A DNA stretch of 64,000 bases from Okamejei kenojei (Eukaryota). The notes under the pieces are model-generated. The model saw only the letters and a program-made list of their open reading frames with translations, was not told where the DNA came from and did no database searches. Shown piece by piece: positions 28,101-50,540 of this stretch; within the stretch, counting starts at the first letter, position 1, and each line of letters starts with the position of its first letter. The stretch covers positions 39,680,001 through 39,744,000 of the forward strand of contig CM069151.1 in the NCBI GenBank assembly GCA_035221665.1, given 5' to 3'. A program made the translations under genes and the position numbers.

Positions 28101-29016
28101 TTCGTCTGCCTGCCACTTTTACTTTTCACCTTGCTACCTAATGCTTCTACCCTCATTTTACACCCTCCTGCCTCTCTGCTCTTGTACCCATCCCCCTGCC
28201 ACATTAGTTTAAATCCTCCCCGACAGCACTAGCAAACACTCCCCCAAGAACATTGGTTCCATTCCATTCCAGGTGCAAACCGTCCTGTTTGTACCGGTCC
28301 CACCTCCCCCAGAACTGGTCCCAGTGCCCTAAAAATTTGAATCCCTCCCCCTTGCACCACTTTTCAAGCCACGTATTCATTTGCATTATCCTCCTATTTC
28401 TACTCTGACTGGCCCGTGGTACTGGTAGTAATCCGGAGATTACTACCTTTGAGGTCCTACTTTTAAGTTTATCTCCTAGCTCCCTAAATTCACCTTGTAG
28501 GACCTCATCCCTTTTTTTACCTATATCGTTGGTGCCAACATGCACCACGACAACTGGCTGTTCACCCTCCCCCTCCAGAATGTTCTGCAGCCGTTCAGTG
28601 ACATCCCTGACCTTTGCACCAGGGAGGCAACATACCATCCTGGAGTCTCGTTTGCGGCCGCAGAAACGCCTATCTATTCCCCTGACAATTGAATCCCCTA
28701 TTACTATTGCCCTTCCCCTCTTTTTTCCCCCATCATGTGCTGCAGAGCCACCCATGGTGCCATGAACCTGGCTGCTGCTGCATTCCCCTGATGAGCTATC
28801 TCCCTCAACAGTATCCAAAATGGTATACCTGTTTAGGAGGGAGATGACCGCAGGGGACTCCTGCACTACCTGCCTACTGCTTTGCTGGCTATTGGCCACC
28901 CGTTCCCTTCTTGTCCTCTTACCTTTTGCCTGCGGTGTGACCAACTCACTGTACGTGCTATCCACGACTTTCTCCGCATTGTGGATGCTCCAGTATGAAT
29001 CCAGCCGCAGTTCCAA
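25141..29016 (-). mobile_element. Near full-length young CR1 LINE nested in the DIRS element: ORF1 (SGNH/GDSL esterase) and ORF2 (APE endonuclease + RT) with one frameshift
   Basis: ORF1 28204-29016 (IVIGDSIVR, VHVGTND, DGLHL); ORF2 with [52 protein letters not shown]; short deletion near 26990 relative to the copy at ~50470; (GAAACATA)n tail. Confidence 0.97.
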
Positions 29017-31410
29017 TCAAGTTATGTTAAACTCCTGATTATTATGGAGTAAACCTGCTTCAGGATAAATCAAAGACATTGATTACAAAGGAAAGACTAT
29101 TGGTCATTAAACTTTGGAAAAATTATGATCCAATGTAAAGATTTGATAATGGATCAAAACAAAGGCAGGAGTATGATAAATACATATTTATCCAACACAG
29201 CCTTATTTGAACCCATATGATTGGGAAGAAAAGGCTTCATGTACATTTGAAGAGGTGCAAAAACTTGTTACAGAAGAAGTTAATGAAATCTACAATGTGG
29301 GAGATTACAGGTGTGTTATGATCAATGATATGGCATAACAAAGGGTTGATTTATTTTAATGTGTAAAGGATCTACAAAAAAATTGTAGAAGGAATTGGTT
29401 CACCTGTATAGGAAAACCTAAAAATTGATTTTAGGTTTGCACCTAAAATATTTCCAATAAAGAAGGGGTACGTAAATTTGTATCATAAATTTCCCCAGGG
29501 AAAAAGATGTGATAAAGCCATACAAGACATCATTTTAAATACACTTTTACAGTGTAAAAACATTTTATTGAAATGGACATCTTCAACATTGAAAAACAGT
29601 TGTTATTAACAAATTGTTAATCATTACTATAAGACTCGAAGGATTGGTATTTAGTACCAATTTATTATCATATTTACAGGTGCTTGAAATTAATTAGAAT
29701 GGGTCAGCTGTGCAAGTTAAGACATTGTCTAATGGATTAAACTCAGTTCTAGGCTGTTCACATAATTACTGGAACAACAATTGCACTGATAAGAAGATCA
29801 GCACTTGCACTAATGAGGACATGGTCATGGTTTATCTTGATCAGATTTTAAATTGGAAGGTTGATCAGGAGTTAGCTGCAAATTAGTGCAGCAATTACAA
29901 GCCTGTTGAGAGGCAAGGGTCCTGACCCATCCAATAAAAACTATGTTTTAGGCATTCATAAACATTCCTAAATTACTATTCTGGGTTTAGGAGTAATTCA
30001 GCACCATATGAGGGGGAAAAATGTTTTCTGAGATACAAATGTCTCATTGCTTTGTTGACAAACTTTGTCCCTCCATCAGAGAAGGAGCTTAGGTAAAAGA
30101 GTTTTTTTTTTAAATAAATAAATAAATAAAAGCTGCAAATAAGGGAAAACACAAGCATTATAAGAGTATGCAGGCCTTTTTGACAGGCCTATGCAAATAC
30201 CAAAAGATGCGTTATCATAATTAAAGTGGTGAATAGAAAAGGTTCCACAAGCTGCTTTAAATATATAAGCTTAGCAGCCGTTGCAAGCTGAAGCAAGTAT
30301 TATCGGATGATGGATAGCTTCTGTGATTATTTGGGTTAAGATAAGTATAATATCTATTCTTATCAAGTTAATATTTGATACGTCCCTTGTTAGGGGACTA
30401 CGGACAATAACACCAGGGAATTGCAAATGGATTGTCCTAAGAAATATTTCACCAAGCATTTGTATTAATTATTGGAGTATCAGGAGCTTTTTATGGATTA
30501 AATGCCTATTCTTCTATTATGAAAGTGTGCATGTCATATCAGGTGACCAATACCACGGCTGTGGCATATATCAATCACATGAGTCAAGTAAGATCATTAT
30601 CAAGTGATTATCTGGGTAACCAGATGTGGCGTATTCTAAAAATGTTTTAGTTCAGCTGTTTATCTCTAAGGAAGAGACAATGTTGTCGCAGACAATAAAT
30701 CAGGGGAAAAACATTGTCAGTAATATGGATTACTTACCATTAATCTGGTTGTATCCAGATTAAATCACCGATCTCTCAAATGTTCCGTGGGAAAACCGAG
30801 AGCAGGAGCGGTGGATATATTTCGCTAAATTACATGAGGAAAGATGTTCTTTTATGTTCCTCATTTTTGTTTCATAGGGCAGTGTCTGATGAAAATGTAG
30901 CAGGACGCTGCCAGGGGCGCTTTGGTGGCCCAAACCGGACCTTCATGGTTCTCATTAATGTTGAGAGTGATGTTTGAACCAGTTATGATGACTCATAGTT
31001 GCAGTAATTTATTGTTGTACAAATTCATCCAGGGCATGAAGATATGAATTTGGTTATCTGCAGGTTTGACCAGACCATTATAACAATTTGACGGTCAAAG
31101 AGGTCTATGAATGTTTTAACTAATATAACAATATAACAATTATGTACAAAAGGAATGTTATACCTGCAATTTGGAGAAATAGCTAAAAAACAATATTTTG
31201 TTTATAAGAAATTGGAAGTATTTTGCAGACAGTAAAAGTCATTTTATCATATTAGATATATGGGAGTTCCTTGTGGATTGCATTTTTTCTCAGCATCTAA
31301 GTGATAGAGCCAATAATAGAGCTCATAGTGTTTATCGGCCTATTTAGGACAAATTGCTGACCAAGAATTTATCGGGCTCATTCATAATATCCCGATATGA
31401 AAAAGGGACA

Positions 31411-32890: not shown

Positions 32891-33207
32891 ATGGCGGTGC
32901 AGCGGTAAAGTTGCTGCCTTGCAGCAAATGCAGCGCTGGAGACCCAAGTTCGAACCCGACTACAGCTGCTGTACTGTACGGAGTTTGTATGTTCTCCCCG
33001 TGACTTGCGTGGGTTTACTCAGAGATCTTTGGTTTCCTCCCACACTCCAAAGACGTATAGATTTGTAGGTTAATTGGCGGTAAATCTTAAAAGAATTGTC
33101 CCGCGTGTGTGTAGGATAGTGTCAATGTGAGGGGATCGCTGGTCGGCGCGGACCTGGTGGGCCAAAGGGCCTGTTTCCACGCTGTATCTCTAAAGTAAAC
33201 TAAACTA
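32891..33207 (+). mobile_element. tRNA-derived V-SINE (HE1-like)
   Basis: A box TGGCGGTGCAGCGG, B box GTTCGAACCC, V-domain-like GTTTGTATGTTCTCCCCGTGAC...GGTTTCCTCCCACACTCCAAAGAC, (TAAAC)n tail; partial copies near 39422, 42430-42600 and 43290-43535. Confidence 0.8.
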
Positions 33208-33349
33208 ATGAAGAGGACTTTGAGCATTTTTAGGCACTCTACCTGTCCTCATCCCCTGCTGTCTTCTTAAAATATTTGCAATTTATTTTTGACACAGGTC
33301 AGGTATCATCTATGGAAACTGAAACAGAGTATACGCTATAGGTTTGAGA

Positions 33350-34348
33350 TCCCTCCGCAAGGTGTTTGATGAGGTTTTGCACGGTGGACGGCTGTAGAAG
33401 ACTAGGTCACGTGGGATCCAGAGAGAGCTAGCCAACTGATTACAGAATTGGTTTGATACAGAATACGGGTGGTATGCCTCAGATTCAGTGCTGGGCCCAT
33501 TGCTGTTTGTGGTTTACATCAACAATTTGGATGAGAATGTGCAAAGCATGATTAGCAAGTTTGCAGATGACACTAAAGTGGGATGTATTGTAGACAGTGA
33601 AGATGGTTATCAAAAATTACAGCAGGACCTTGATCAGTTGGACAAGTGAACTGAGGAGTGGCTCATGGATTTTAATGCAGATAAGTGTGAGGTATTTCAT
33701 TTTGGGAAGTCAAACCAGGCCAGGACCTTCACAATAAATGGTAGGGTCCTGGGGGTGTATTGTAGGGCAGAGGGACCAAGGAGTACAGGCACATAGTTCT
33801 CTGAAAATTGTGTCATGGGTAGATCTGTTGGTCAAGAAAGCTTTCAGTATATCGGCCTTCATCAGTCAGGGTATTGAGTATAGAGGTTGGGATGTTATGT
33901 TACACTAGGACAAGACATTGGTGGGGCCACATTTGGAGCAATGTGTTCAGTTTTAGTCTCCCTGCTATAGGAAAGATGCTGTTAAGCTTGAAAGACTGCA
34001 GAGAAGATTTATGAGGATGTTACTAGGACTCATAGGCATGAGCAACATGGAGAGGATGGGTAGACTAGGATTTTATTCCTTGGAGCACAGGAGGTTGAGT
34101 GGTGATCATATAGAGGTGTATAAAATCATGGAAGGATAGATGGGGTTAATGCACACTTTTACTGGAATGGGGGAATCAAGTTTAAGGTGAGACGGGAAAC
34201 ATTTAATAGGAACCTGAGGAGGGGCACCTTTTTCACACAGGGTGGTGGAAAAGAACCGCCAGATGGTGTAGTTTGAGGCAAGAACCATTAGCAATATTTA
34301 AAATACATTTGTACGTGTATCATGGATAGGAAATGTTTAGAGGGTATT
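33350..34348 (+). mobile_element. Old decayed CR1-type LINE RT fragment
   Basis: AAGTTTGCAGATGACACTAAAGTGGG (KFADDTKV) and downstream CR1 motifs with stops. Confidence 0.85.
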
Positions 34349-35895
34349 TAGAAACATAGAAATTAGGTGCAGGAGTAGGCCATTTGGCCCTTCGAGCCTG
34401 CACCGCCATTCAATATGATCATGGCTGATCATCCAACTCAGTATCCCGTACCTGCCTTCTCTCCATACCCTCTGATCCCCTTAGCCCAAGGGCCACATCT
34501 AACTCCCTCTTAAATATAGCCAATCAACTGGCCTCAACTACCCTCTGTGGCAGAGTTCCAGAGACTCACCACTCACTGTGTGAAAAAAGACTTTCTCATC
34601 TCGGTCTTAAAGGATTTTCCCCCTTATGCTTAAGCTGTGACCCCTTGTCCTGGACTTCCCCAACATCGGGAACAATCTTCCTGCATCTAGCCTGTCCAAC
34701 CCCTTAAGAATTTTGTAATTTTCTATAAGATGCCCTCTCAATCTCCTAAATTCTAGAGAGTATAAACTGAGTCTATCCAGTCTTTCTTCGTAAGACAGTC
34801 CTGACATCCCAGGAATCAGTCTGGTAAACGTTCTCTGCACTCCCTCTATGGCAATAATGTCCTTCCTCAGATTTGGAGACCAAAACTGTATGCAATACTC
34901 CAGGTGTGGTCTCACCAAGACCCTGTACAACTGAAGTAGAACCTCCCTGCTCCTATACTCAAATCCTTTTGCTATGAAAGCTAACATACCATTCGCTTTC
35001 TTCACTGCCTGCTGCACCTGCATGCCTACTTTCAATCACTGGTGTACCATGACACCCAGGTCTCGCTGCATCTCCTCTTTTCCTAATCGGCCACCATTTA
35101 GATAATAGTCTGCTTTCCTGTTTTTGCCACCAAAGTGGATAACCTCACATTTATCCACATTATACTGCATCTGCCAAACATTTGCCCACTCGCCCAGCCT
35201 ATCCAAGTCACCTTGCAGCCTCCTAGCATCCTCCTCACAGCTAACACTGCCTCCCAGCTTAGTGTCACCCGCAAACATGGAGATATCGCCTTCAATTCCC
35301 TCATCCAGATCATTAATATATATTGTAAATAGCTGGGTCCCAGCACCGAGCCTTGTGGTACCCCACTAGTCACTGCCTGCCATTGTGAAAAGGACCCGTT
35401 TACTCCTACTCTTTGCTTCCTGTTTGCCAGCCAGTTTTCTATCCACATCAATACTGAATCCCCAATGCCGTATGCTTTAAGTTTGTATACTAATCTCTTA
35501 TGTGGGACCTTGTCCAAAGCCTTCTGGAAGTCCAGATATACCACATCCACTGGTTCTCCCTTATCCACGCTACTAGTTACATCCGCGTAAAATTCGACAA
35601 GATTCGTCAGTCATGATTTACCTTTCGTAAATCCATGCTGACTTTGTCCAATGATTTCACCACTTTCCAAATGTGCTGCTATCCCATCTTTAATAACTGA
35701 CTCTAGCAGTTTCCCCACTACCGATGTTAGACGAACTGGTCTGTAATTCCCCGTTTTCTCTCTCCCTCCCTTCTTAAAAAGAGGGGTTACGTTTGCTACC
35801 CGCCAATCCTCAGGAACTACTCCAGAATCTAAAGAGTTTTGAAAGATTATCACTAATGCATCCACTATTTCCTGAGCTACTTCCTTAAGTACTCT
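34349..35895 (-). mobile_element. 5'-truncated CR1 LINE (same subfamily as 25141)
   Basis: ORFs 34607-35997 match the CR1 RT with several frameshifts; tail at 34349. Confidence 0.95.
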
Positions 35896-36659
35896 TGGAT
35901 TTGGGCCAATGCGGGCAGGTGGGATTAATGCATGTGGGCACCTTGGTCGGCATGGACAAGTTGGGCCGAAGGGCCTGTCACTGCGCCTTGGAACCACAGA
36001 TACTGCCCGGCCTGCTTAGAATTTACAGTATTTTCTGTTTTCATTTAATGTGGAGTCTCAGTTATGAAATAGACAATGGGTGCAGGAGTAGGCCATTCGG
36101 CCCTTTGAGCCAGCACCGGCATTCAATGTGATCATGGCTGATCATCCCCAATCGGTCCCTCGTTCCTGCCTTCTCCCCATATCTCCTGACTCTGCTATTT
36201 TTAAGAGCCCTATTTAGCTCTCTCTTGAAAGCATCCAGAGAACCTGCCCCCACCTGAGGCAGAGAATTCCCCAGACAGGGAGAGTCAACAGACTGCAAAT
36301 GCTGGAATCTGGAGCAAAAAGTACTGGAGTAAGTCAGCGAGCCAGGCAGCATCTGTGGAGACAACGGACAAGGCGACGTTTCGGTTTGGGATCCTTCTTT
36401 CGGACGTTATGTTGATCACAGAAGGTGGATTAAAGTGAGCGCGTCTGTGGTCAGTTGGGCTGTCACTGATCTTGAACCTGTTGCTTAGAATGCACCATAG
36501 ACGCAAAATGGTGGAGTAACTCAGCGAGCCAGGCAGCATCACTGGAGAGAATGAATGGGTGACGTTTCCGATCGAGGCCCTTCTTCAGACTGAAGACGAT
36601 GCTGCCTGTCCCGCTGAGTTACTCCAGCATCTGCAGTTCCTTCCTACACGCTTAGAATG

Positions 36660-36897
36660 CACCGACGCGTGGACGCGTCTCCTCTTGCTCGAGTATCTTT
36701 GGTCTCCATTGCTGTCCCGTCAGCTGACAGAGGGGAGGTTTGGTGAGATGACACCGCCTCTGGTGAGTCACCAGGGAGCGGCCACAGCCCGTCCTGCGGA
36801 CGAGGCGCAGCGTGAGCCGGGCGGAGCCTCCCCTAACGCGGACAAGGCTGCTCCCAGGAAGCGCGGAGTGGGAGCTTGCGGGGAAGGCTTGCACTCG
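36660..36897 (+). promoter_or_regulatory. CpG-rich candidate promoter and first exon of the legumain-prodomain-only gene
   Basis: CpG-dense island; palindromic AP-1 site CTGGTGAGTCACCAG (36760-36774); GC box GGGCGG (36819); ETS-like CAGGAAG; strong donor TCG|GTGAGT at 36897/36898. Confidence 0.55.
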
Positions 36898-38206
36898 GTG
36901 AGTTCAGTTCACATTTGGGGTATCCCCCCCCCCCCCCATCCTCTGTATCTGAATATCTGATTTATTTTTTGAAATTGACCGTGGAGTATTGTAAATCACT
37001 TTTTAAAGTTGAAAGTGGAAAGGTATATCGTCAATGTAACAAATTTAAAGTTATATATCCAATTACAAGATGTTTGAAGGAGGGTCTCGACCCGAAGCGT
37101 CACCAGAGATGCTGCCTGTCCCGCTGAGTTACATTTTGTGTCTATTTTCGGTGAAAACCAGCATCTGCAGTTCCTACATTAAAGATATTTTCTCTTGGGA
37201 AGGAAATGATTAAACTGGTAAATATAATAGCTGGGATGTTGATGCTCAGGGAGGTTGGTGGGATTAGGGAATCGTACAGTGTAGGGCGAGGGGGATGAGG
37301 AGTCAAGGAGGAAGACACAAAGTGCTGGAGGACTCAGTGGGTCAGGCAGCCTCCCTCAGTGGAGGGCACAGGCACACGATCTTTCTTCAGCCTCTGGTCA
37401 GCTTTTGCCCCCTCGTGTTCAATTTGGGAAAAGCCTGTAGCGGAAACTCTGACAGAATTCCTCGATCAACATCCCCATCCACATCAACACTTCCTTATCT
37501 ATGTATCTCCCTCTCCCCTGACTCCAGTCTGGAGAAGGGTCTCGACCCGACATGTCACCCATTCCTTCTCTCCAGAGATGCTGCCTGTCCCGCTGAGTTA
37601 CTCCAGCATTTTGTGCCTATCTGGCAGAAATGCCACTGGCCCCCTCCCTCCGTGAGATATCTGTCAGGTCACAAGATTGTCACGTTCCATGCAAATCCCC
37701 AACGTGCCTTTTGTTCGAGACGGTGACAATCTGCCAACCTTTTTTGATTTGATTCACGGCTCAGTTATCTGCTGGTTACCAGGAAGCAAATACACTGCCA
37801 TAGTCCCGACAACACAACAACCATTCTGCATCGCAGTGTTTCACCAGCCGTGTAGATCTCGGAAATAAGACACAAAATGCTGGAGTAACTCAGCGGGTCA
37901 GGCAGCATCTCTGGAGAGAAAGGAATGGGTGACGTTTCGGGCCGAGACCCTTCTTCAGTTCTCGGGGTTTTTCTGAGCTCATGAAATGATATGCATGAGA
38001 ATGAACTGTAAAAGCCCCTGACTATCCTGAGTGTCTTCATGTTTGTCACTGATTAGGAGAATCCTGATGATAAATATTGATTCCTGCTCCTTGAGGTGTT
38101 CAGACTCTCTGTGCTGTCCCCTTAGGATTGGAGAGCTTTGTTTCTTTGTGAGAACTACAGTGTTCCCATGTTGCTTCCTGCTGCAGGGACGGGCAAACCC
38201 ACTCTA

Positions 38207-38332
38207 ATGGCGGGAATGGAGACTGTGGCACAGTGCGACGTACCTGTTACTCTTCTTGAGAATAGGATCAAAGCTGCTAAGGATCCAGAGGAGAAGGAAA
38301 AGCTGCAGAAAGACCTGGACCATCTCCTTGAG
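38207..38332 (+). CDS. LGMN: Legumain-like exon (activation-peptide/LSAM start): MAGMETVAQCDVPVTLLENRIKAAKDPEEKEKLQKDLDHLLE
   Basis: Resembles legumain [32 protein letters not shown]; candidate acceptors at 38125 (phase 0) and 38186 (phase 1); donor GAG|GTAATG; start codon uncertain. Confidence 0.8.
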
Positions 38333-38859
38333 GTAATGGTGCAAACTTGTTCTTCTACCCTGGGCCCCATACGAGGCATCTTCACTCATCGGGAACCAGA
38401 GACTGTTGGATGGTGCTAGTCAGTGTGGGGCAGAGCCACATTAACCTGCCTACAGTGCAGGGAGACACACACTGGTAGTGCTGCTGTCAAATGGGGCTCC
38501 TGCTCCAGGGAATTCTTCAAAGGGTTTCGGCCTATTTCCTTCGCTCCACAGATGCTGCTGCACCCGCTGAGTTTCTCCAGCATTTTTGTGTACCTTCGAC
38601 TTTCCAGCATCTGCAGTTCCTTAAACAATTCTTCACTGTTCCCAGGACAGGCAGTAAAATGATGGATTTCCAGTCTTTGTTTACAGTTTAGTTTATTGTC
38701 ACGTGAACTGAGGTACAGTGAAAAGCATTTGCGGCGTGCTATCTAGTCAGCGGAAAGACAATACATGATTACAATTGCGACATTTACAGTGTACAGATAC
38801 ACGATACGGGTCCTTCCAGTGTGGTCGGGGTGTAACCAAACAGTTCTGTTGTGTTACAG

Positions 38860-39030
38860 GTGAGGGAGCTTATCCGACAGACAGTGCGAGAGATTGTTAC
38901 TCTGGCCACGGACTCCGAGGAACAGGCTGAGCGAGTGCTCACCGGCAAGAAGCGCCTCACAGAGCGGGAAAACTACCGCTCTGCGGTGGAGTATTTCCAA
39001 ATGCGGTGCTTTGACTGGCATAATCCAGAG
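38860..39030 (+). CDS. LGMN: Legumain-like LSAM exon VRELIRQTVREIVTLATDSEEQAERVL...YFQMRCFDWHNPE
   Basis: 171-nt phase 0-0 exon matching legumain LIEKSVRKIVSLL...HFRTHCFNWHSP. Confidence 0.92.
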
Positions 39031-39560
39031 GTACGTCTGTGATGCATTCACATAGTACAGAGATAGCTGCCAAGGTGAGTTCATGCCACCATTGTCAAAT
39101 CAATATTATCAAGAGGCCAAAGAGAAAATATACCAGGGTAGGCGATCAAAAGCTGGGTCAACGGGTCAGCTTTAAGGAGGGGAGAGAGGCAGGGTACTTG
39201 CCCCCTCCTCCCAGAAACCTGCAAACCAGAAGATCTCAGGGTCTTCAACCCATGTGCCAGAGCCTGCGTTGTGCAGTGGCTTGGAAAAGTGTAGCGATAC
39301 GACAAGAAGAAGACTGGCTGGGAACTCTGCTGCTGTTCACAGCGCTGATAAAACAGCTCGATGCAGCACTGAGCAGCTTCTTAACTGAAACCAATGACCA
39401 CAGGAAGAGCCAGATTTAATAGGGGCAGCACAGTGGTGCAGTTAGCTGTGTTGCTGCCTCACCGTTCCAGCGACTGGGTTTCAATCCTGATCTCTGGGAC
39501 TGAATGTTTGGAGCTTGCACATTCTCCCTGTCACTGCCTGGGTTTCTTCCCCCTGAATAT

Positions 39561-42427
39561 TAGAAACATAGAAAATAGGTGCAGGAGGAGGCCATTCAGC
39601 CCTTCGAGCCAGCACCGCCATTCATTGTGATCATGGCTGATCGTCCGCTATCAATAACCCGTGCCTGCCTTCTCCCCATATCCCTTGACTCCACTAGCCC
39701 CTAGAGCTCTATCTAACTCTCTCTTAAATCCATCCAGTGACTTGGCCTCCACTGCCCTCTGTGGTAGGGATTTCCACAAACTCACAACTCTCTGGCTGAA
39801 AAAAAATGTTCTCACCTCAGTCTTAAGTGACCTCCCCTTTATTCTAAGACTAGAAGCCCCTGGTTCTGGACTCACCCAACATTGGGAAAATTTTTCCTGC
39901 ATCTAGCTTGTCCATTCCTTTTATAATTTTATATGTTTCTATAAAATCTCCCCCTCATCCTTCTGAACTCCAGTGAATACAAGCCTAGTCTTTTCAATCT
40001 TTCCTCATATGACAGTCCCGCCATCCCAGGGATCAATCTCGTGAACCTATGCTGCACTGCCTCAATCACAAGGATGTCCTTCCTCAAATTAGGAGACCAA
40101 AACTGTACACAATACTCCAGATGTGGTCTCACCAGAGCCCTATACAACTGCAGAAGAACCTCTTTACTCCTGTACTGAAATCCTCTTGTTATGAAGGCCA
40201 ACATTCCATTAGCTTTCTTCACTGCCTGCTGTACCTGCACGCCAACTTTCAGTGACTGGTGTACAAGGACACCCAGGTCTCGCTGTACCACCCCCTTACC
40301 TAACCAAACCCCATTGAGATAATAATCTGCCCCCTTGTTTTTGCCACCAAAGTGGCTCACATTTATCTATATTATACTGCATCTGCCACGCATCTGCCCA
40401 CTCACTCAACCTGTCCAGGTCCCCCTGCAACCTCCTAACATCCTCTTCACAGGTTACACTGCCACCCAGCTTTGTGTCATCCGCAAACTTGCTAGTGTTG
40501 CTCCTAATTCCCTCTTCAAAATCATTAATATATATGGTAAACAGTTGCGGCCCCAACACCGAGCCTTGCGGCACTCCACTTGCCACTGCCTGCCATTCTG
40601 AAAAGGACCCGTTCACTCCTACTCTTTGCTTCCGGTCTGCCAACCAATTTTCTATCCATGTCAACACCCTACCCCCAATACCATGTGCTCTAATTTTAGT
40701 CACCAGTCTCCCGTGCGGGACCTTATCAAAGGGTTTCTGAAAGTCTAGATACACTACATCCACTGGCACCCCTTCATCCATTTTACTTGTCACATCCTCA
40801 AAAAATTCCAGAAGATTAGTCAAGCATGATTTCCCTTTCATAAATCCATGTTGACTTGGACTAATCCTTTTACTGCTATCCAAATGCTGCGTTATTACCT
40901 CTTTAATAATTGACTCCAGCATCTTTCCCACCACCGAAGTCAGGCTAACTGGTCTGTAATTCCCCGTTTTCTCACTCGCTCCTTTCTTGAAAAGTGGGAT
41001 AACATTAACTATCCTCCAATCCACAGGAACTGATCCTGAATCTATTGAACATTGGAAAATGATCACCAATGCGTCCACTATTTCTAGAGCCACCTCCCTG
41101 AGGTCCCTGGGATGCAGACCATCAGGCCCAGGGGATTTATCATCCTTCAGTCCCATTAGCCTACCCAATACTATTTCTCGCCTAATGAAAATTTATTTCA
41201 GTTCCTCTACCCCCTTAGATCTTCTGTCCTCCAGTACATCTGGGAGATTGTTTGTGTCCTCCTTAGTGAAGACAGATCCGAAGTACCTATTCAACTCTTC
41301 TGCCACTTCCTTGTTACCCATAATTATTTCACCCGTGTCTGCCTTCAAGGGACCCACATTTGACTTTGCTACATTTTTCCCCTTAACATATCTAAAGAAG
41401 CTTTTACTGTCCTTCTTTATATTCCTGGCCAGTTTCCCCTCATACTTCATCTTTTCAGCCCGTATTGCCCATTTTGTTTCCATTTTGTCCTATGAAAGTT
41501 TCCCAATCCTCTGGCTTCCGGCTACTCTTTGCTGTGTTATACATCTTTTCTTTTAGTTTTATTCTATCCCTAACTGCTCTTGTCAGCCACGGTTGCCTCC
41601 TACTCCCCTTAGAATCTTTCTTCCTTTTTGGAATGAAATGAGCCTGCGTCTTCCGGATTATGCCCAGAAATTCCTGCCATTGCTGTTCCACCGTCATTCC
41701 TGCTAGGATCCCTTTCCAGTCTACTTTGGCCAGTTCCCCTCTCATGCCTTCATAGTCCCCTTTGTTCAACTGCATCACTGCCACTTCCGATTTAAAGTTC
41801 TCCTTCTCAAATTGCAGATTAAAACTAATCATATTATGATCACAACCTCCAAGCGGTTCCTTTGCCTCGAGTTCTCTTATCATATCTGGTTCATTGGACA
41901 ACACTAAATCCAGAATTGCCTTTTCTCTGGTCGGCTCCATTACAAGCTGCTCTAAGAATCCATCTCGGAGGCATTCTACAAACTCTCTTTCTTGGCGTCC
42001 TGAACCAACCTGATTTTCCCAGTCTACCTGCATATTGAAATCCCCCATCACCACAGTGGCATTACCTTTGTTACATGCCAGTTTTAACTCCTGTTGCAAC
42101 TTACACCCTACATCCACCCTACTATTTGGGGGTCTGTAAATAACACCAATCAGTGTCTTCTTGCCTTTACAATTCCTCAACTCAATCCACAGTGACTCTA
42201 CCTCATCAGTCCGTATGTCTTCCCTCGCAAGGGACTGAATTTCATCCCTCACCTGCAGAGCTACCCCCCCTCCTCTGCCCACCTGCCTGTCCTTTCTACA
42301 GGATGTATAACCCTGAATATTAAGTTCCCAGGCCCGATCCTCCTGCAGCCACGTCTCAGTAATCCCCACAATGTCATATCTACCAATCGCTAACTGAGCC
42401 TCAAGCTCATCTACTTTACTTCTTATA
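39561..42427 (-). mobile_element. CR1 LINE (second subfamily) with EN and RT remnants, in an intron of the legumain-like gene
   Basis: ORFs 39651-42558 with GITETW, GDFN, YLDFQKPFDKVPH and FADDTK; frameshifted. Confidence 0.95.
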
Positions 42428-43098
42428 CCTAGTTCTATCCTACACAATAGGGACAATTTACAGAAGCCAATTAACCAACAAACCTGCATGTCCTTGGAAT
42501 GTCGAAGGAAACTGGAGCACCCAGAGAAAACCCACACGGTCACAGGGAGAACATACAAGCTCTATACAGACAGCGCCCATAGTCAGGATCTTGACGCTGT
42601 AAGACAGTGTGCAGTGTGGGATTGACGATCGGAATTGGATGGGTGGGTCAAAGGACCTTTTCTGTGCTATACAACCCTAATAGTCTGAAATGTTGCACAA
42701 AGCATAGGGTTTTGGCCCTAGAGAAGAGTAGGTGCCTGGGTGTTGCTTCGTGTTGTTCCAGTGCCCATTCTCAGCATGGAGAACATAAGAAAGTGGTTGA
42801 GGTGAGGGGTAGGAGGTATAGTGAGAGATGTTTTGACTCAAAGCTGAGAATTTTGGAGTATCTCATGGTTGTGAATGGTGTGGAAAAGAGGAATCCCTCT
42901 GCACCAGTCTGGGCACTGTAAATAATTGTTCTGATGTATATTGTTACAGTATGTTACATAATGAAAGTGTGGGAAAGTGAGTTGTGAGGATGACAAAAGG
43001 GCGACACAAAGAGGCAAAAAAAAAGGGTGCGCATGGCCAAAGATTGTGTTAATGTGAGAAAATGTGGGATCGTCCAATTTTGTGCTTTGTTGTTACAG

Positions 43099-43166
43099 CA
43101 TGAATATGCTCTTCACCAGTTGAGTCCCTTCGTCAATTTATGTGTGGAGCAGATTCCACTGACACG
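43099..43166 (+). CDS. LGMN: Legumain-like LSAM exon HEYALHQLSPFVNLCVEQIPLTR
   Basis: 68-nt phase 0-2 exon matching legumain [23 protein letters not shown]. Confidence 0.92.
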
Positions 43167-44199
43167 GTACAGTAATACCCAACTCTCTCTCTTTGCTCAA
43201 GCAATCAAAGCAAATAACATCTGGAATTAACTTTTAACAGACCATTGATCCCTTTAACAGAAAGCCTGATGGAAAAGTAGTGAGCTGGGCAGTGCAATGT
43301 GTATATTCTGTATGTTCTCCCTGTGGTCGCTTTGGCTTCCCCCAAGTGCTCTAGTTTCCGCCCACATCCCAAACTCATGTAGGTTAATTTGCCTCTGTAA
43401 ATCGCCCCTAGTGCTTTAGGATGTGTGTGAAGGTGGGGTGGCATGGAATTGGTGTGAGCAGGTGATTGGTTGCAGGTTTGGACTCCGTGGGGTGAAGGGC
43501 CTGTTTCCATGCTGTATATTTAAACTAAACTAAACAGCATGGTAGTATGTTTCTGTGCCTCTTAGAGTAATGGATGCTATGTTATGTAATTAAACTGATC
43601 ACATCTATTTACTCAGAGTAATGGGGCTAAGTTCCACAATACAAATATTCAACAGAGATATCGTGAGTTAGGTCAGGTTACCCAGAGTAAAAACAGCAAT
43701 AGCCTTTGTCAAACTTGAAATAATCATCAAAATCAGCCTTCGAGTCTGAATTAGCAGCAGGCTAACTTTGTACAGTCTTGTCTTTCTGAAGCAGGGAATC
43801 CCGGGCAGAGGGATAGTTTACAGCCATTGACCCAGCACAATCAAAGCCTCCTTTTAGTCATCAGTTCAGGACCATTCAAGTCAGAGAATTAAGGAAAGTG
43901 CTGGTAATATGATCATGAAAGTATTGTCATTCAATCTGAAAGTATTGAAAAGCATTAAATGTACTGACTTATTTTATCCAAAATAAGTGTCTCCACTTTG
44001 TCATCTTGAATCAAATATTGGTTGAAATTGTTCATCTTGGTCTCTTGTCTTGGAAAGCAGCCGTCAGAATTGTAATAGATCTTTGCCTCTAACTTTTCTT
44101 AACAAATGTAGATTGTGTTCCATTTTTTTCAAAAAAAAAATTCTGTGCTATCCCCCTGTGCACGAGCTGCATTGTAATCACTCCTTTGTTTTTAAATAG

Positions 44200-44245
44200 G
44201 ATCAAGGAAGCGATTGACCAAGTCAGTGAAAAGCTGAAGAAATGA
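44200..44245 (+). CDS. LGMN: Legumain-like terminal exon IKEAIDQVSEKLKK*
   Basis: Acceptor TTTTTAAATAG in phase 2; matches legumain IKLSMDHVC; candidate AATAAA at 45291. Confidence 0.85.
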
Positions 44246-47200
44246 AGAGCTGGCACTCCTCATCTTCAGCACAGCAGAGGGAGGGACCCTCAGGAAGGAC
44301 CTGTCCCTCCCCCATCCCGTGTGCTTTCCAACTGGAATTGTAATTTTTTTGTGCTTGTTTTTTCTCTCTCTCCCTCTGCTGGTCAGATCATCTTGCTTGC
44401 AATAACTGGGAGGAGGTTTCTGCTGAAAAGCAAATCATGAGAGACAAAAGCAAATCATAGACAGCCTTTGTACTTTAAATAATCAGACCATTTTTTTTAA
44501 ATGGATGACACAATGATACCATTAGTTGAATGCTACCTCAGATGGTAGAAACATTTCTGTGCCATTAATATTTGTAATATTGAAAATTCCTTCTCAGTAG
44601 GTATGGAGTCATTGTAGTTAAATATACTTGATTATCGCAAATCAATTTACTATTTTTTTTCCAAATCTTTATTTTAAAGATTTAAACAGCTTCTGAGTGG
44701 CCTACTTTAATTTCTCTCACCGTTCACATCTGCATTGTGAAGCAATTTAATCAGAAGTTGACAATCGAGCTTCACTAAATCTCCTTTTGGCAATGGCGAG
44801 GCTTAATTTTGCAGTGATTTTAGTAATTTCTTACCAGCAGGGCAGGCGGTTAGTTCTAAGGTGGCTGAGTCTTGAGAACAAGATCCAGACTGATACATAA
44901 GTGCATTTCTGAGAGAGTGCAGTATTTGTGTGCATGCCGACTTCTGGGTGAGATTTATACCAAAGCCATCCAATCTTTTGCAGGATGTAATGTAAAGGTC
45001 CCTATCCAAATATATGTAAAGATTAAAGTAGACAAAAATGCTGGAGAAAATCAGCGGGTGAGGCAGCATCTATGGAGCGAAGGAAATAGGCAACGTTTCG
45101 GGTTGAAACCCTTCTTCAGAAGTGAAGATGAATGTGGATTCCCGACCAGCATTTACTGCTAAACTAGACCTTTTGGCCTGTCCTTTGTTTAATATTGTTC
45201 ATTGTACATACATTCCCAATGGTAACTACGTTTCAAAGCTAATTGGCTGGGAAGGCCTCAAGAATAGTGCTTGAGAAATGAATGGTGTTAAATAAATTCT
45301 AATCTTTTTAAAATTATTCCTTTTATTTTAAGTAAATGAAATGATTAATTCATTGTTCTGATTATTTGTTCTCTGTGTTAGTATTTCTGTTGATTGCTCT
45401 TCTGATCACATTATTTTTTCAAAAATGTAAACATTTAAGTCTAACTTCTGGAACCTGAGCACATGTTAGAACCTCCCTGATTGTTGGAGATAACCTAGTA
45501 TGCCAGCTGTTGAATTTATCTCCACCCTTCCTCACAGGCAATGGGGTTAGGAGGGAGAGATAGATCAGCCATGATTGAATGGCGGAATAGATTTGATGGG
45601 CCGAATGGCCCAATTCTAACCTATTTCTATGACCATATGAAACAGGCCATTGTTAGCTGTGGCCAATGTGAAAACTAGTGTAGACATGAAGTATTGAGTA
45701 CATAATAATAGTTACATTGGGTAGTGGTGAGTCTGGAGTACTGTGTACAGCTTTGGTCTTATTTAAGGAACACAATAGAAGCACGAGAAGCAGTTCAGAG
45801 AGGTGAACTAGACTGATAGCTGGAGTTGTTGGGTGGTCTTGTGGGGAAAGGTCAGACAAGCAGGGAGTTTAGAAGAGTGAGCGGGGATTTGATTAAAACG
45901 TGCACTCCAGAAAGGTTATGAATAAATTCATGGATTCGTGGAGTGGATTTTTTGTAGAAGAATCTGGAACTAGTGTCATTGTGGAAATATAATTTAAGAT
46001 AACGGAGGTGAAATATCTTTCCTCGGTTGAGTCTTTGGAACTCTTCCCTAAAGAGCAGTGAAGGGAGACAGTCTTTAAATGTTTTACGGCAGATGCAAGT
46101 ATCCTTGCCAAGCAAGAGGTGAAAAGTGCCTCATGTAGGCAGGAATGTGGTTAGAATTGGATTAGCCATGATCTTGTTTAAGGGTGGAGGTGGCTCGTGG
46201 GTCTGTGAGAGGTCTATGCCTGCTGATGATTCATATGTATAGAATGTACCAGCATGGAATTTGACTTTACATTCCACTCCTCTTATCCAACACCCTTTTG
46301 TTTCCTTTTCACCTCAAGCCTTTGACATTTACTCCTCCCATCCGCCAATGAAACCGCTCGCCTGAAGAGTCCCGGCCCAAAACGTCACCCATCCATTTTC
46401 TCCAGTGATGCTGCCTGACCTGTTGAGATACTCCTGCACTTTGTGTCTATCCACCGGTCATTTGCCAGGTTTTGTCCCACCCCCGCATCTCATTTCCAGC
46501 TTCCTCCTCCCTACTACAACCAGTCTGAAGAAGGACCCTGAATTGAAACGTCACCTGTCCATTCCCTCCACAGGTGCTGCCTGAGTTCCTCCAGCACTTT
46601 GTGTTTTGTCCACTATCCTGCAGGTTGTCCTTGATGAGCTGATGCTTTGACAAAATCTCTTTTTCTTTAGTCTCGCTGAGATTCAGGTCTGTGTTTTGAC
46701 CGAGAAAGAGAGGCTTGAAATGAGAGTAAGATCAGATTACAGGCATTTGCATTGGACACTGTCCAGGAATGCAATAAGGAGACAGATGGAGTTCTGAAGG
46801 GTTCAGGCAAAGTGGAGCAATTATTTCAGTGACTGCTTTTCTAACACACAATCTCCTGGCAGGTGAGTTTTAAGATGCCATTGCTACTTTAGGTAGCTTT
46901 GCTCATGAGATAGTGAGAATGGACCTTGCACATCCCATCGTGCTGTGTTAGAACCACGCCTCATATATAACTAATGTCTGACCCTTGCACAAGGTCAATG
47001 GCAATAATAAACTCTTGATGCTTTTCATCTTCTGTAACCAAAGCTCTGCTCAGTTCCAGAATGATTAATATCAAAGCTAGAAGTATCACTGAGAAGAGGG
47101 GAATCTAATTTCTCCGACAGCTGACAAATTCATTAGCAATGCACTGTCAGCTCAGCTGTACAGTATGTCCAAAAAAAGTCATCCCAAAGTGAATTAATGT

Positions 47201-49012: not shown

Positions 49013-50540
49013 CATAGAAACATAGCAACATAGAAATTAGGCGCAGGAGTAGGCCATTCGGCCCTTCGAGCCCGCACCGCCATTCAATATGATCATGGCT
49101 GATCATCCAACTCAGTATCCCGTACCTGCCTTCTCTCCATACTCCTCTGATCCCTTTAGCCACAAGGGCCACATCTAACTCCCTCTTAAATATAGCCAAT
49201 CAACTGGCCTCAACTACCCTCTGTGGCAGAGAGTTCCAGAGACTCACCACTCTCTGTGTGAAAAAAGTCTTTCTCATCTCGGTCTTAAAGGATTTCACCC
49301 TTATCCTTAAGCTGTGACCCCTTGTCCTGGACTTCCCCAACATCGGGAACAATCTTCCTGCATCTAGCCTAGCCAACCCCTTAAGAATTTTGTAAGTTTC
49401 TATAAGATCCCCTCTCAATCTCCTAAATTCTAGAGAGTATAAACCGAGTGTCTATCCAGTCTTTCTTCATAAGACAGTCCTGACATCCCAGGAATCAGTC
49501 TGGTGAACCTTCTCTGCACTCCCTCTATGGCAATAATGTCCTTCCTCAGGGTATACAAAAGGCTGGAGAAACTCAGCGGGTGCAGCTTCAATTCCCTCAT
49601 CCAGATCATTAATATATATTGTAAATAGCTGGGGTCCCAGCACTGAGCCCTGCAATACCCCACTAGTCACTGCCTGCCATTGTGAAAAGGACCCGTTTAC
49701 TCCTACTCTTTGCTTCCTGTTTGCCAGCCAGTTCTCTATCCACATCAATACTGAACCCCCAATGCCGTATGCTTTACGTTTGTATACTAATCTCTTATGT
49801 GGGACCTTGTCGAAAGCCTTCTGGAAGTCCAGATATACCACATCCACTGGTTCTCCCCTAGTTACATTCTCGAAGAATTCCACAAGATTCGTCAGATATG
49901 ATTTACCTTTCGTAAATCCATGCTGACTTTGTCCAATGATTTCACCACTTTCCAAATGTGCTGCTATCCCATCTTTAATAACTGACTCTAGCAGTTTCCC
50001 CATTACCGATGTTAGACTAACTGGTCTGTAATTCCCCGTTTTCTCTCTCCCTCCCTTCTTAAAAAGAGGGGTTACGTTTGCTACCCGCCAATCCTCAGGA
50101 ACTACTCCAGAATCTAAAGAGTTTTGAAAGATTATCACTAATGCATGCACTATTTCCTGAGCTACTTCCTTAAGTACTCTGGGATGCAGCCTATCTGGCC
50201 CTGGGGATTTATCGGCCTTTAATCCATTCAATTTACCCAACACCACTTCCCGACTAACCTGGATTTCACTCAATTCCTCCTTTGACCCGCGGTCCCCTGC
50301 TATTTCCGGCAGATTATTTATGTCTTCCTTAGTGAAGACGGACCAAAGTAGTTATTCAATTGGTCCGCCATATCCTTGTTCCCCATGATCAACTCACCTG
50401 TTTCTGACTGCAAGGGACCTACATTTGTTTTAACTAATCTCTTTCTCTTCACATATCTATAAAAACCTTTGCAGTCAGGTTTTATGTTCCCTGCCAGTTT
50501 TCTTTCATAATCTATTTTTCCTTTCCTAATTAAGCCCTTA
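49013..50540 (-). mobile_element. 5'-truncated CR1 LINE with internal deletion
   Basis: ORFs 49200-50662 match the 25242 copy; ~0.4 kb missing near 49550. Confidence 0.93.

What the first reader, a model, noticed from the sequence alone, without database searches (positions are those of the whole stretch)
36660..44245. Stand-alone legumain pro-domain (LSAM) gene with no protease domain and no signal peptide
Seen: four exons match the last four legumain exons in sequence, size (171 and 68 nt internal exons) and phase, with an open frame and intact splice sites. I found no legumain catalytic-domain exons upstream (no AGS-GW-NYRHQAD, DHG or EACESGS motifs); the 15 kb back to the NLR stop is mostly TE. 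Instead, a CpG-rich segment with a strong donor (36897) sits 1.2 kb upstream, and in-frame ATGs (38207; 38216 in GGAATGG context) give a ~133-136-aa protein. Established: the LSAM domain has a death-domain-like helical fold and normally stabilises and inhibits the lysosomal protease in cis. Inference: a partial duplicate has been domesticated as an independent, probably cytosolic, death-fold-like protein.
Basis: partly seen in the sequence, partly recalled or inferred. Interest (0 to 1): 0.85.

Follow-up and report, generated by a model that had tools for sequence, protein, structure and literature searches.

The report
Stand-alone legumain prodomain gene, ancient
This is a real, transcribed gene that encodes only the tail (prodomain) of the lysosomal protease legumain, with no protease part. 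It belongs to a gene family at least as old as the shark/bony-fish split, which public databases list as "legumain-like" and which I found no paper on.

Summary
Four coding exons (38187-38332, 38860-39030, 43099-43166, 44200-44245, + strand) have canonical splice sites. They give one open frame of 136 aa (ATG 38207) or 133 aa (ATG 38216), homologous to the legumain activation-peptide helix plus LSAM domain.

- **Transcript:** Four in-frame stops in that exon rule out any upstream coding extension.
- **No protease part:** full-length legumains match nothing else in the 64 kb.
- **Age:** this is not a recent, lineage-specific duplicate. Orthologues of 134-170 aa exist in sharks (sawshark, 81% identical, same MAGM start), sturgeon, gar, tarpon/bonefish, milkfish, suckers, characins and catfishes. 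They split from canonical legumain with 100/100 support, and their tree follows the species tree.
- **Family traits:** all members lack two of the four LSAM cysteines and the Asn323 cleavage site, and the well-predicted N-termini lack a signal peptide. They carry their own conserved motifs.
- **Structure:** the predicted fold superposes on prolegumain (TM 0.78).
- **Function:** open. A modelled complex with the legumain catalytic domain passes its controls (0.87 against 0.38), but this may be memory of solved prolegumain. The docking surface is not specially conserved in the family.

I found no paper on it.

The parts
36603..36897 (+). Exon 1, non-coding, CpG-rich. The 5' end is uncertain because the contig stops in a SINE-like repeat. 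Donor TCG|GTGAGT at 36897.
   Evidence: X1 record 5 covers 36603-36896 and is then spliced to 38186/7. GC 0.65, CpG o/e 0.84. In-frame stops at 36615, 36744, 36813, 36834.
38187..38332 (+). Start codons at 38207 (MAGM..., weak context) and 38216 (GGAATGG, strong context). Encodes the short N-terminus, the DVP motif and the activation-peptide alpha6 helix.
   Evidence: 34/42 residues identical to sawshark P0058, which also starts MAGM; whale shark P0057 starts at the second Met. Spliced on both sides in X1 record 5.
38860..39030 (+). Exon 3, 171 nt, phase 0/0. Encodes LSAM helices with the family-specific TDSEE loop and the FDWH motif.
   Evidence: PDB legumain 343-397, E 3e-7. Pfam Legum_prodom 15.1 bits on this exon alone. 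44/57 identical to P0058. Spliced in X1 and X6 contigs.
43099..43166 (+). Exon 4, 68 nt. Encodes HEYALHQL...NLC.
   Evidence: tblastn with canonical legumains, residues about 400-425. 18/22 identical to P0058. Its junctions lay outside the laid stretch and were not seen directly.
44200..45058 (+). Exon 5: last 15 codons (IKEAIDQVSEKLKK), stop at 44243-44245, then 3' UTR. The end is approximate.
   Evidence: 13/14 identical to P0058. The 927 nt of X1 record 5 beyond 39030 equal 68 nt plus about 859 nt, which places the contig end near 45058, inside a SINE-like repeat. This is inference from lengths.
39929..42558 (-). LINE fragment (reverse transcriptase plus endonuclease ORFs) inside intron 3. 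Not part of the gene product.
   Evidence: Pfam RVT_1 at 4e-32 and Exo_endo_phos_2 at 1e-9.

Best explanation
Shown: this is the window species' orthologue of an ancient stand-alone gene family. The family arose from legumain by a DNA-level duplication that kept the last four coding exons and their intron positions, lost all catalytic exons, and gained its own CpG-rich promoter exon. The product is a 133-136-aa protein made of the activation-peptide alpha6 helix plus the LSAM bundle (six predicted helices in all).

Inferred: it has no signal peptide and cannot form the two native LSAM disulfides, so it probably folds and acts in the cytosol or nucleus.

Inferred, least certain: it works as a non-catalytic protein-binding module whose constraint has moved away from the surface that caps legumain in cis. 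The conserved surfaces are now family-specific: the T-D-S-x-E loop between helices 2 and 3, an invariant Glu and Lys, and the E-R-I-K-x-A-I-D-x-V C-terminal helix. On this reading it has taken on a partner or role of its own and is not simply a free copy of the zymogen cap.
For: - **Independent transcript:** spliced 1545-nt contig with the 36897->38187 junction and in-frame stops in exon 1.
- **No catalytic exons:** none in the 64 kb.
- **Family:** about 30 database proteins of 134-201 aa from sharks to catfishes. Some come from 1.1-1.5-kb Logan contigs that encode the whole protein and are therefore spliced RNA (P0037, P0038).
- **Separate loci:** in Megalops, Albula, Chanos and Astyanax the stand-alone and canonical genes sit on different chromosome-sized contigs.
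- **Tree:** stand-alone versus canonical split has 100/100 support, and the stand-alone topology follows the species tree.
- **Rate:** pairwise identity between species is 0.45-0.67, against 0.56-0.81 for the canonical prodomain. It evolves faster but is clearly constrained.
- **Fold:** pLDDT 86.8, TM 0.76-0.78 and rmsd 2.1-2.4 A to prolegumains.
- **Shift of constraint:** predicted-interface columns are more conserved than others in canonical legumains (0.84 against 0.71, p 0.01) but not in the stand-alone family (0.66 against 0.69, p 0.52).
- **Canonical invariants replaced:** Lys of KRK, Asn323-Asp324, Glu and Arg of Y-E-Y-A-L-R, and Cys 1 and Cys 4.
- **Stand-alone-specific invariants:** they appear elsewhere in the protein.
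- **Charge:** net charge falls from +2.4 (pI 8.3) to -1.3 (pI 6.7); the window protein is about -5. The canonical LSAM holds the acidic catalytic domain electrostatically (PMC9788469).
Against: - The modelled complex of gar stand-alone protein with the gar legumain catalytic domain passes its controls and sits on the active site.
- The alpha6 helix and the DVP motif, parts of the zymogen cap, are among the best-kept segments.
- The interface set comes from a model, burial was not controlled for, and the conservation contrast is modest.
- No localisation, partner or phenotype data exist.
- No alternative partner is identified.
Confidence: 0.45

Rival explanations
1. Free-standing prodomain that regulates legumain in trans. 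The protein docks on the active-site face of mature legumain as the cis AP-LSAM does. It would block endopeptidase activity and/or stabilise the enzyme at near-neutral pH wherever legumain meets the cytosol or nucleus. This is the same logic as stefins, or as the propeptide-like inhibitors of cathepsin L.
For: - Complex model: ipSAE 0.87 in three runs against a best control of 0.38. Partner pLDDT is 85 and the runs agree in at least 94% of contacts. That mark was reached by 51 of 78 solved complexes and 2 of 108 mismatched pairs.
- The interface covers the His150 and Cys191 segments and residues 214-221 of the catalytic domain.
- The fold matches the prolegumain prodomain, including the alpha6 helix.
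- 47% of interface columns keep the canonical consensus, against 33% elsewhere (not significant, p 0.21).
- After cleavage, LSAM is known to stay bound non-covalently and to modulate activity (PMC9788469).
- There is a precedent for stand-alone pro-regions acting as inhibitors (I29 family, PMC4089206).
Against: - The pass may be memory of solved prolegumain structures; the tool itself warns of this.
- There is no signal peptide, so the protein would sit in a different compartment from the bulk of legumain.
- The net positive charge is lost, as are the canonical invariant Arg and Glu at the interface.
- Interface columns are not preferentially conserved within the family.
Confidence: 0.35
2. 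Transcribed relic: a duplicated gene fragment that is expressed but has no function.
For: It is a partial copy in a transposon-rich region. Conserved cysteines are lost. There are no functional data.
Against: The frame is open and the splice sites intact, with the same start, length and C-terminus from sharks to catfishes. The tree follows the species tree with branch lengths like those of the canonical prodomain. There are family-specific invariant residues. A neutral sequence would not stay alignable across the shark/bony-fish split.
Confidence: 0.03
3. The 3' end of a full-length legumain gene whose catalytic exons lie outside the window or were missed, or a short isoform from an internal promoter of canonical LGMN.
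For: The exon structure is shared with canonical legumain. The upstream region is long and repeat-rich.
Against: The transcript contig starts in exon 1, and four in-frame stops precede the ATG. The window has no catalytic-domain match. In four bony fishes the stand-alone and canonical genes lie on different large contigs. The sequence belongs to the stand-alone clade, not to canonical legumain: 81% identity to the sawshark stand-alone protein against 35% to a canonical prodomain.
Confidence: 0.02

Closest known systems
C-terminal prodomain of legumain / asparaginyl endopeptidase (activation peptide + LSAM; PDB 4FGU, 4NOK; Pfam PF20985)
   Same: Homologous: exon B reaches E 3e-7 to PDB legumain, and identity is 35-37%. 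It has the same helical fold including the alpha6 helix (TM 0.78). The intron positions around the 171-nt exon are the same. The DVP, FNWH, Y-x-x-A-L and N-L motifs are kept.
   Different: It is encoded alone, with no peptidase C13 domain and no signal peptide. The Asn323-Asp324 cleavage site and the KRK motif are replaced. The first and fourth LSAM cysteines are absent in all 24 members. The protein is acidic to neutral where the prodomain is basic. It has its own invariant T-D-S-x-E loop and C-terminal helix.
RefSeq/UniProt 'legumain-like' short proteins of fishes (e.g. sawshark P0058, whale shark P0057, gar P0036, channel catfish P0049, piranha XP_017554107.1)
   Same: Orthologues. They share the length, the start, the motifs and the C-terminus (...IDxVSEKLKK). 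Identity over the four exon translations is 81% (sawshark), 73% (whale shark) and 52% (gar).
   Different: No differences of kind. These are automatic gene models, and I found no publication on them. Several carry mis-predicted ends (for example P0001 runs into a reverse transcriptase).
Propeptide-like cysteine protease inhibitors, MEROPS I29 (mouse CTLA-2alpha, Drosophila crammer, Bombyx BCPI; PMC4089206)
   Same: The same concept: a protease pro-region encoded as a separate small protein.
   Different: They are unrelated in sequence and fold (cathepsin L propeptide, clan CA, N-terminal pro-region). Their inhibition has been shown experimentally; nothing has been shown for this protein.
Death-domain superfamily (DD, CARD, PYD, DED)
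   Same: The LSAM domain is described as having death-domain-like topology (PMC7489914, PMC12320161), and this protein is a small helical bundle.
   Different: No member of the superfamily appeared above background in either structure search. There is no sequence similarity.

Membership tests
Legumain proenzyme (peptidase family C13) | Caspase-like catalytic domain with the His (DHG) and Cys (ACESGS) dyad | tested here: not met
   tblastn with four full-length legumains finds no catalytic-domain match in the 64 kb at E<=1. The transcript contig has none, and in-frame stops precede the ATG.
Legumain proenzyme (peptidase family C13) | N-terminal signal peptide for the secretory/lysosomal route | tested here: not met
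   The N-terminus MAGMETVAQCDVP... has a highest 11-residue hydropathy of 1.4. Orthologues with well-predicted starts have similar N-termini. No dedicated signal-peptide predictor was available.
Legumain proenzyme (peptidase family C13) | Autocleavage site Asn323-Asp324 between the activation peptide and LSAM | tested here: not met
   Asn is invariant and Asp nearly so (94%) in 18 canonical fish legumains. They are replaced by Lys (83%) and Ser/Thr/Asp-Pro in the stand-alone family; the window has K-D-P.
Legumain proenzyme (peptidase family C13) | Two conserved LSAM disulfides (four invariant cysteines) | tested here: not met
   Four Cys are invariant in canonical sequences. The first and fourth are absent from all 24 stand-alone members and from the window (N and S); the second and third are kept in the window. 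The 1-3/2-4 pairing is from memory and was not verified.
Pfam Legum_prodom (PF20985) | Profile match above the gathering score | tested here: inconclusive
   Exon B alone scores 15.1 bits against a cut-off of 25.2. The joined product was not scanned, by rule. Orthologues P0057 and P0058 carry PF20985 in the precomputed annotation.
Legumain AP-LSAM fold | alpha6 helix plus five-helix LSAM bundle superposable on solved prolegumain | tested here: met
   Tested on the orthologue P0058 (81% identical), not on the window product. pLDDT 86.8, six helices. 4nom/4fgu TM 0.78, rmsd 2.1-2.2 A over about 122 residues. OaAEP1 Z 11.2.
Stand-alone 'legumain-like' LSAM family of fishes | 134-170 aa; starts a few residues before DVP; K/R-x-P in place of N-D; T-D-S-x-E loop; no Cys 1 or Cys 4; C-terminal E/T-R-I-K-x-A-I-D-x-V-S | tested here: met
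   Exon-by-exon alignment to family members. All listed motifs are present in the window exons.
Stand-alone 'legumain-like' LSAM family of fishes | Separate from canonical legumain prodomains in a tree | tested here: met
   The split has 100/100 support, and shark members branch first within the stand-alone group. The window product itself was left out of the tree; its membership follows from 81% identity to P0058 against 35% to canonical P0082.
Death-domain superfamily | Structural similarity to DD, CARD, PYD or DED domains above background | tested here: not met
   None appears among Foldseek hits with E<1, or in the top 50 of the wide VIA-align search. Non-legumain rows have Z<=5.3 and cover only two helices.
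Propeptide-like protease inhibitors (functional class) | Binds and inhibits the parent protease in trans | not testable with these tools
   Only a model is available: ipSAE 0.87 against a best control of 0.38, and it may be memory of solved prolegumain. A biochemical assay is needed.

The most novel reading that the evidence does not exclude
Jawed vertebrates ancestrally had a second, protease-less legumain gene. It encodes a cytosolic, disulfide-free copy of the prodomain that acts as an endogenous trans-regulator (guard or stabiliser) of legumain outside the lysosome. It has been kept for over 400 million years in sharks and many ray-finned fishes. It was not found here in tetrapods or euteleosts. 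If true, it would be the first natural stand-alone LSAM and a handle on what the released LSAM domain does.
Probability: 0.3. Interest if true: 0.8.

Novelty: new variant of a known kind. Interest (0 to 1): 0.6.

Why it matters
Legumain (AEP, delta-secretase) is studied intensively in antigen processing, cancer and neurodegeneration. Whether its released LSAM domain has any role of its own is an open question. Work on the isolated domain has also been hampered by its disulfides (PMC12320161).

This family is a natural experiment. It is the same fold, made without the protease, without a signal peptide and without the native disulfides, and it has been held under selection from sharks to catfishes. 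The protein is small and should be easy to express. It exists in laboratory-tractable fishes (Astyanax, channel catfish, gar).

It offers a direct test of two things: whether an LSAM-type module can act in trans on legumain, and whether it has been re-used for something else. It also shows that 'legumain' and 'legumain-like' labels on about 140-aa fish proteins hide a distinct gene and are not fragments.

Tried and rejected
- **Joined model not searched.** The exons were searched one by one by reference. Natural orthologues (P0058 sawshark, P0036 gar) stood in for the whole protein. The join was translated only locally to check the frame.
I therefore have no orthologous loci, no synteny, no exon structure of orthologues or of canonical LGMN, and no coding DNA for dN/dS.
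- **Read laying limits.** The one call allowed 6000 nt, so I chose the upstream side. The B->C and C->D junctions were not seen directly. Its table of differences is truncated, so exon-versus-intron divergence in the related genomes (X21, X22) could not be counted.
- **Pfam on single exons:** below threshold or spurious (Protealysin propeptide 14 bits, Topo-V 12.6 bits). Rejected as noise.
- **ESM Atlas look-up of P0058:** best feature score 0.75, TM below 0.5. Uninformative.
- **Death-domain similarity:** not found.
- **Literature:** searches for a stand-alone LSAM or legumain-prodomain gene found nothing.
- **Disulfide pairing:** the 2013 PNAS prolegumain paper is not held. A search for the cysteine pairing found nothing relevant, so the 1-3/2-4 pairing stays from memory.
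- **Absence from tetrapods, euteleosts and zebrafish:** this is only 'not among the hits' of word-limited searches. It is not shown.
not used in the contig that covers that junction (X1 record 5).
Full report
**1. What is in the sequence**

On the + strand there are four coding exons:
- 38187-38332 (146 nt)
- 38860-39030 (171 nt, phase 0 at both ends)
- 43099-43166 (68 nt)
- 44200-44245 (46 nt, including TGA)

Every junction is GT-AG, and three of the four acceptors follow a clear pyrimidine-rich tract. Read in phase, they give one open frame. Exon B alone matches solved legumains at residues 343-397 (E 3e-7). On its own it scores 15 bits on Pfam Legum_prodom.

The exons were searched one by one by reference, and natural orthologues served as whole-protein proxies. 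The join was translated only in local scripts, to check frames.

**2. No protease part, and its own promoter exon**

Four full-length legumains (gar, tarpon, bichir and a record labelled lamprey) hit only exons B and C anywhere in the 64 kb, on either strand, even at E<=1.

I laid Logan contigs of four runs on 33150-39149. Run X1 holds a 1545-nt contig (record 5, depth 83) that lies as 36603-36896 | 38186-38330 | 38858-39030, with 927 more nucleotides beyond the stretch. The exons have no mismatches. Its length is accounted for by exon 1, the four coding exons and about 0.8 kb of 3' UTR.

Run X6, from a related species, holds a 416-nt contig with the A->B junction. Runs X21 and X22 are unspliced genomic contigs of relatives, with 4-6% divergence.

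Exon 1 is CpG-rich (GC 0.65, CpG o/e 0.84, against 0.44 upstream). It carries stops at 36615, 36744, 36813 and 36834 in the frame of the ORF. Nothing upstream can therefore be read into the protein, wherever transcription really starts. Contigs cannot show a start, and this one ends in a SINE-like repeat.

The ORF begins at ATG 38207 (136 aa) or 38216 (133 aa, better context). The only assembly gap is 8 kb downstream. The surrounding DNA is LINE/SINE-rich.

**3. It is a member of an old family**

A search of 1.8 billion representatives with exon B, followed by a profile search, found about 30 proteins of 134-201 aa that consist only of this region. They come from:
- whale shark (P0057, 134 aa) and Japanese sawshark (P0058, 136 aa)
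- sturgeons and alligator gar (P0036)
- bonefish and tarpons
- milkfish
- two suckers
- seven characiforms
- eight catfishes

Source names are 'legumain-like', 'legumain' or 'Legumain prodomain domain-containing protein'.

Over the four exon translations the window is 81% identical to the sawshark protein, which shares the MAGM start. It is 73% identical to whale shark, 52% to gar and 35% to a canonical gar prodomain.

In tarpon, bonefish, milkfish and cavefish the short gene and the canonical legumain sit on different chromosome-sized contigs.

I built a maximum-likelihood tree of 23 stand-alone proteins and 19 canonical prodomains. It splits the two groups with 100/100 support. Inside the stand-alone group the order follows the species tree: sharks, sturgeon, gar, elopomorphs, milkfish, suckers, characins and catfishes. 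Two defective gene models and the window's own joined product were left out.

The simplest reading is one origin before the split of cartilaginous and bony fishes, followed by vertical descent.

Many database fragments of canonical legumains begin at ...Q|[VI]RE and run into an intron right after ...NWHxx[ET], 57 codons later. The 171-nt phase-0 exon is therefore shared. This points to a DNA-level duplication and not to retroposition.

**4. What changed relative to the prodomain**

Compared with 18 canonical fish legumains, the 24 stand-alone proteins and the window differ as follows:
- They lack the first and fourth of the four invariant LSAM cysteines.
- The invariant Asn323 (and Asp324, kept in 94%) autocleavage site is replaced by Lys-(Ser/Thr/Asp)-Pro.
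- The first Lys of the KRK motif is replaced by Gln.
- The invariant Glu and Arg of Y-E-Y-A-L-R are lost.

They gain invariants of their own: a Val before the DVP motif, the T-D-S-x-E loop, a Glu and a Lys in helices 4-5, and the E-R-I-K-x-A-I-D-x-V C-terminal helix.

Net charge moves from +2.4 (pI 8.3) to -1.3 (pI 6.7); the window protein is about -5. The N-terminus has no hydrophobic core.

The literature states that LSAM has two conserved disulfides and a death-domain-like topology. It also states that the basic LSAM holds the acidic catalytic domain electrostatically and stays bound after cleavage above pH 4 (PMC7489914, PMC12320161, PMC9788469).

Between species the stand-alone proteins are 0.45-0.67 identical where the canonical prodomains are 0.56-0.81. 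They evolve faster but are plainly under constraint.

**5. Fold**

AlphaFold2 on the sawshark orthologue, with a 42-row alignment, gave pLDDT 86.8, pTM 0.79 and six helices.
- Foldseek finds only legumain proenzymes. Mammalian ones give TM 0.76-0.78 and rmsd 2.1-2.4 A over about 122 residues; plant ones are lower.
- The wide VIA-align search gives one clear hit, OaAEP1 proenzyme at Z 11.2 over 128 residues. The rest is helical-hairpin noise at Z<=5.3.
- No death domain, CARD, PYD or DED chain appears.

**6. How it may work**

I folded the gar stand-alone protein with residues 25-290 of gar legumain. The result was ipSAE 0.87 in all three runs, with a best control of 0.38. Partner pLDDT was 85 and at least 94% of contacts were shared between runs. 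That mark was reached by 51 of 78 solved complexes and 2 of 108 mismatched pairs.

The interface lies over the His150 and Cys191 segments and residues 214-221. As the tool warns, prolegumain structures are solved. This shows likeness to the zymogen arrangement; it does not show that this copy binds.

I then asked whether that interface is under special constraint. In canonical legumains the interface columns are more conserved than the rest (0.84 against 0.71, p 0.01). In the stand-alone family they are not (0.66 against 0.69, p 0.52). This test is modest, because the interface comes from a model and burial is not controlled.

Together with the lost charge, the lost invariant Arg and Glu, the lost secretory signal and the new family-specific conserved patches, I favour a re-purposed cytosolic binding module (0.45). 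A faithful trans-regulator of legumain comes second (0.35). A functionless relic (0.03) or a mis-read full-length gene (0.02) is very unlikely.

**7. Comparison and novelty**

By descent and fold it is a legumain prodomain. It fails the tests for being a legumain proenzyme: no catalytic domain, no signal peptide, no cleavage site and no pair of disulfides.

The nearest concept is the I29 propeptide-like inhibitors (CTLA-2alpha, crammer, BCPI; PMC4089206). These are unrelated in sequence, and their activity has been shown by experiment.

Gene models of the family are public, but three full-text searches found no paper on a stand-alone LSAM gene. I class it as a new variant of a known kind, with interest 0.6. 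It is a solid, conserved and easily testable oddity for protease biology. Its existence is already visible in annotation and its function is unknown.

**8. Limits**

- Exon C/D junctions were not observed directly.
- Tissue of expression is unknown because run identities are coded.
- Absence from tetrapods and euteleosts is only 'not among the hits'.
- The disulfide pairing is from memory.

Noticed in passing
window 36748-38206 (spliced: 36748-36897 + 38187-38206): An upstream ORF of 56 codons starts in exon 1 in another frame. It ends at a TAA that overlaps the first main ATG (TAATG at 38204-38209). This could couple termination to re-initiation, if transcription starts upstream of 36748.
   Followed up: partly
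window 30314-30415 (+): Rfam U2 snRNA match of 50.7 bits (gathering score 46). It spans only 102 nt of a 192-position model, so it is probably a truncated U2 pseudogene.
   Followed up: no
window 25242-29016 (-); also 55980-58811 (+), 35098-35997 (-), 49467-50273 (-): LINE copies. The first has three long ORFs: a GDSL-lipase/OSK-like ORF1, an endonuclease and a reverse transcriptase. It looks nearly intact. The others are fragments.
   Followed up: partly
window 36500-36650, 37090-37180, 37520-37620, 37870-37960, 38530-38620, 45030-45120: Many copies, in both orientations, of one SINE-like repeat (core ...GCTGCCTG(T/A)CCCGCTGAGTTACTCCAGCA...). It reaches enormous summed depth in all four runs and breaks the transcript contigs at both ends.
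   Followed up: no
protein P0114 (record named Lampetra planeri legumain-like): In the tree its prodomain nests inside euteleost legumains, next to medaka and fugu (100/97 support). The record is probably contamination or mislabelled and is not a lamprey gene.
   Followed up: partly
proteins P0008, P0044, P0045, P0039, P0040 (bonefish, tarpons, two characiforms): These gene models carry hydrophobic N-terminal extensions of 25-55 residues upstream of the conserved start. They may be mis-called 5' UTR, or real alternative first exons that add a signal or anchor. If real, some lineages would route the protein differently.
   Followed up: no
It lies 8 kb downstream of the gene and does not affect it.
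   Followed up: no
window 38315 and 38961: Differences seen in related species' contigs. 38315 C>T (X21, X22) would change His to Tyr at a position that also varies among sharks. 38961 A>G (X6, X21, X22) is synonymous (ACA to ACG). The table was truncated, so no rate could be derived.
   Followed up: partly
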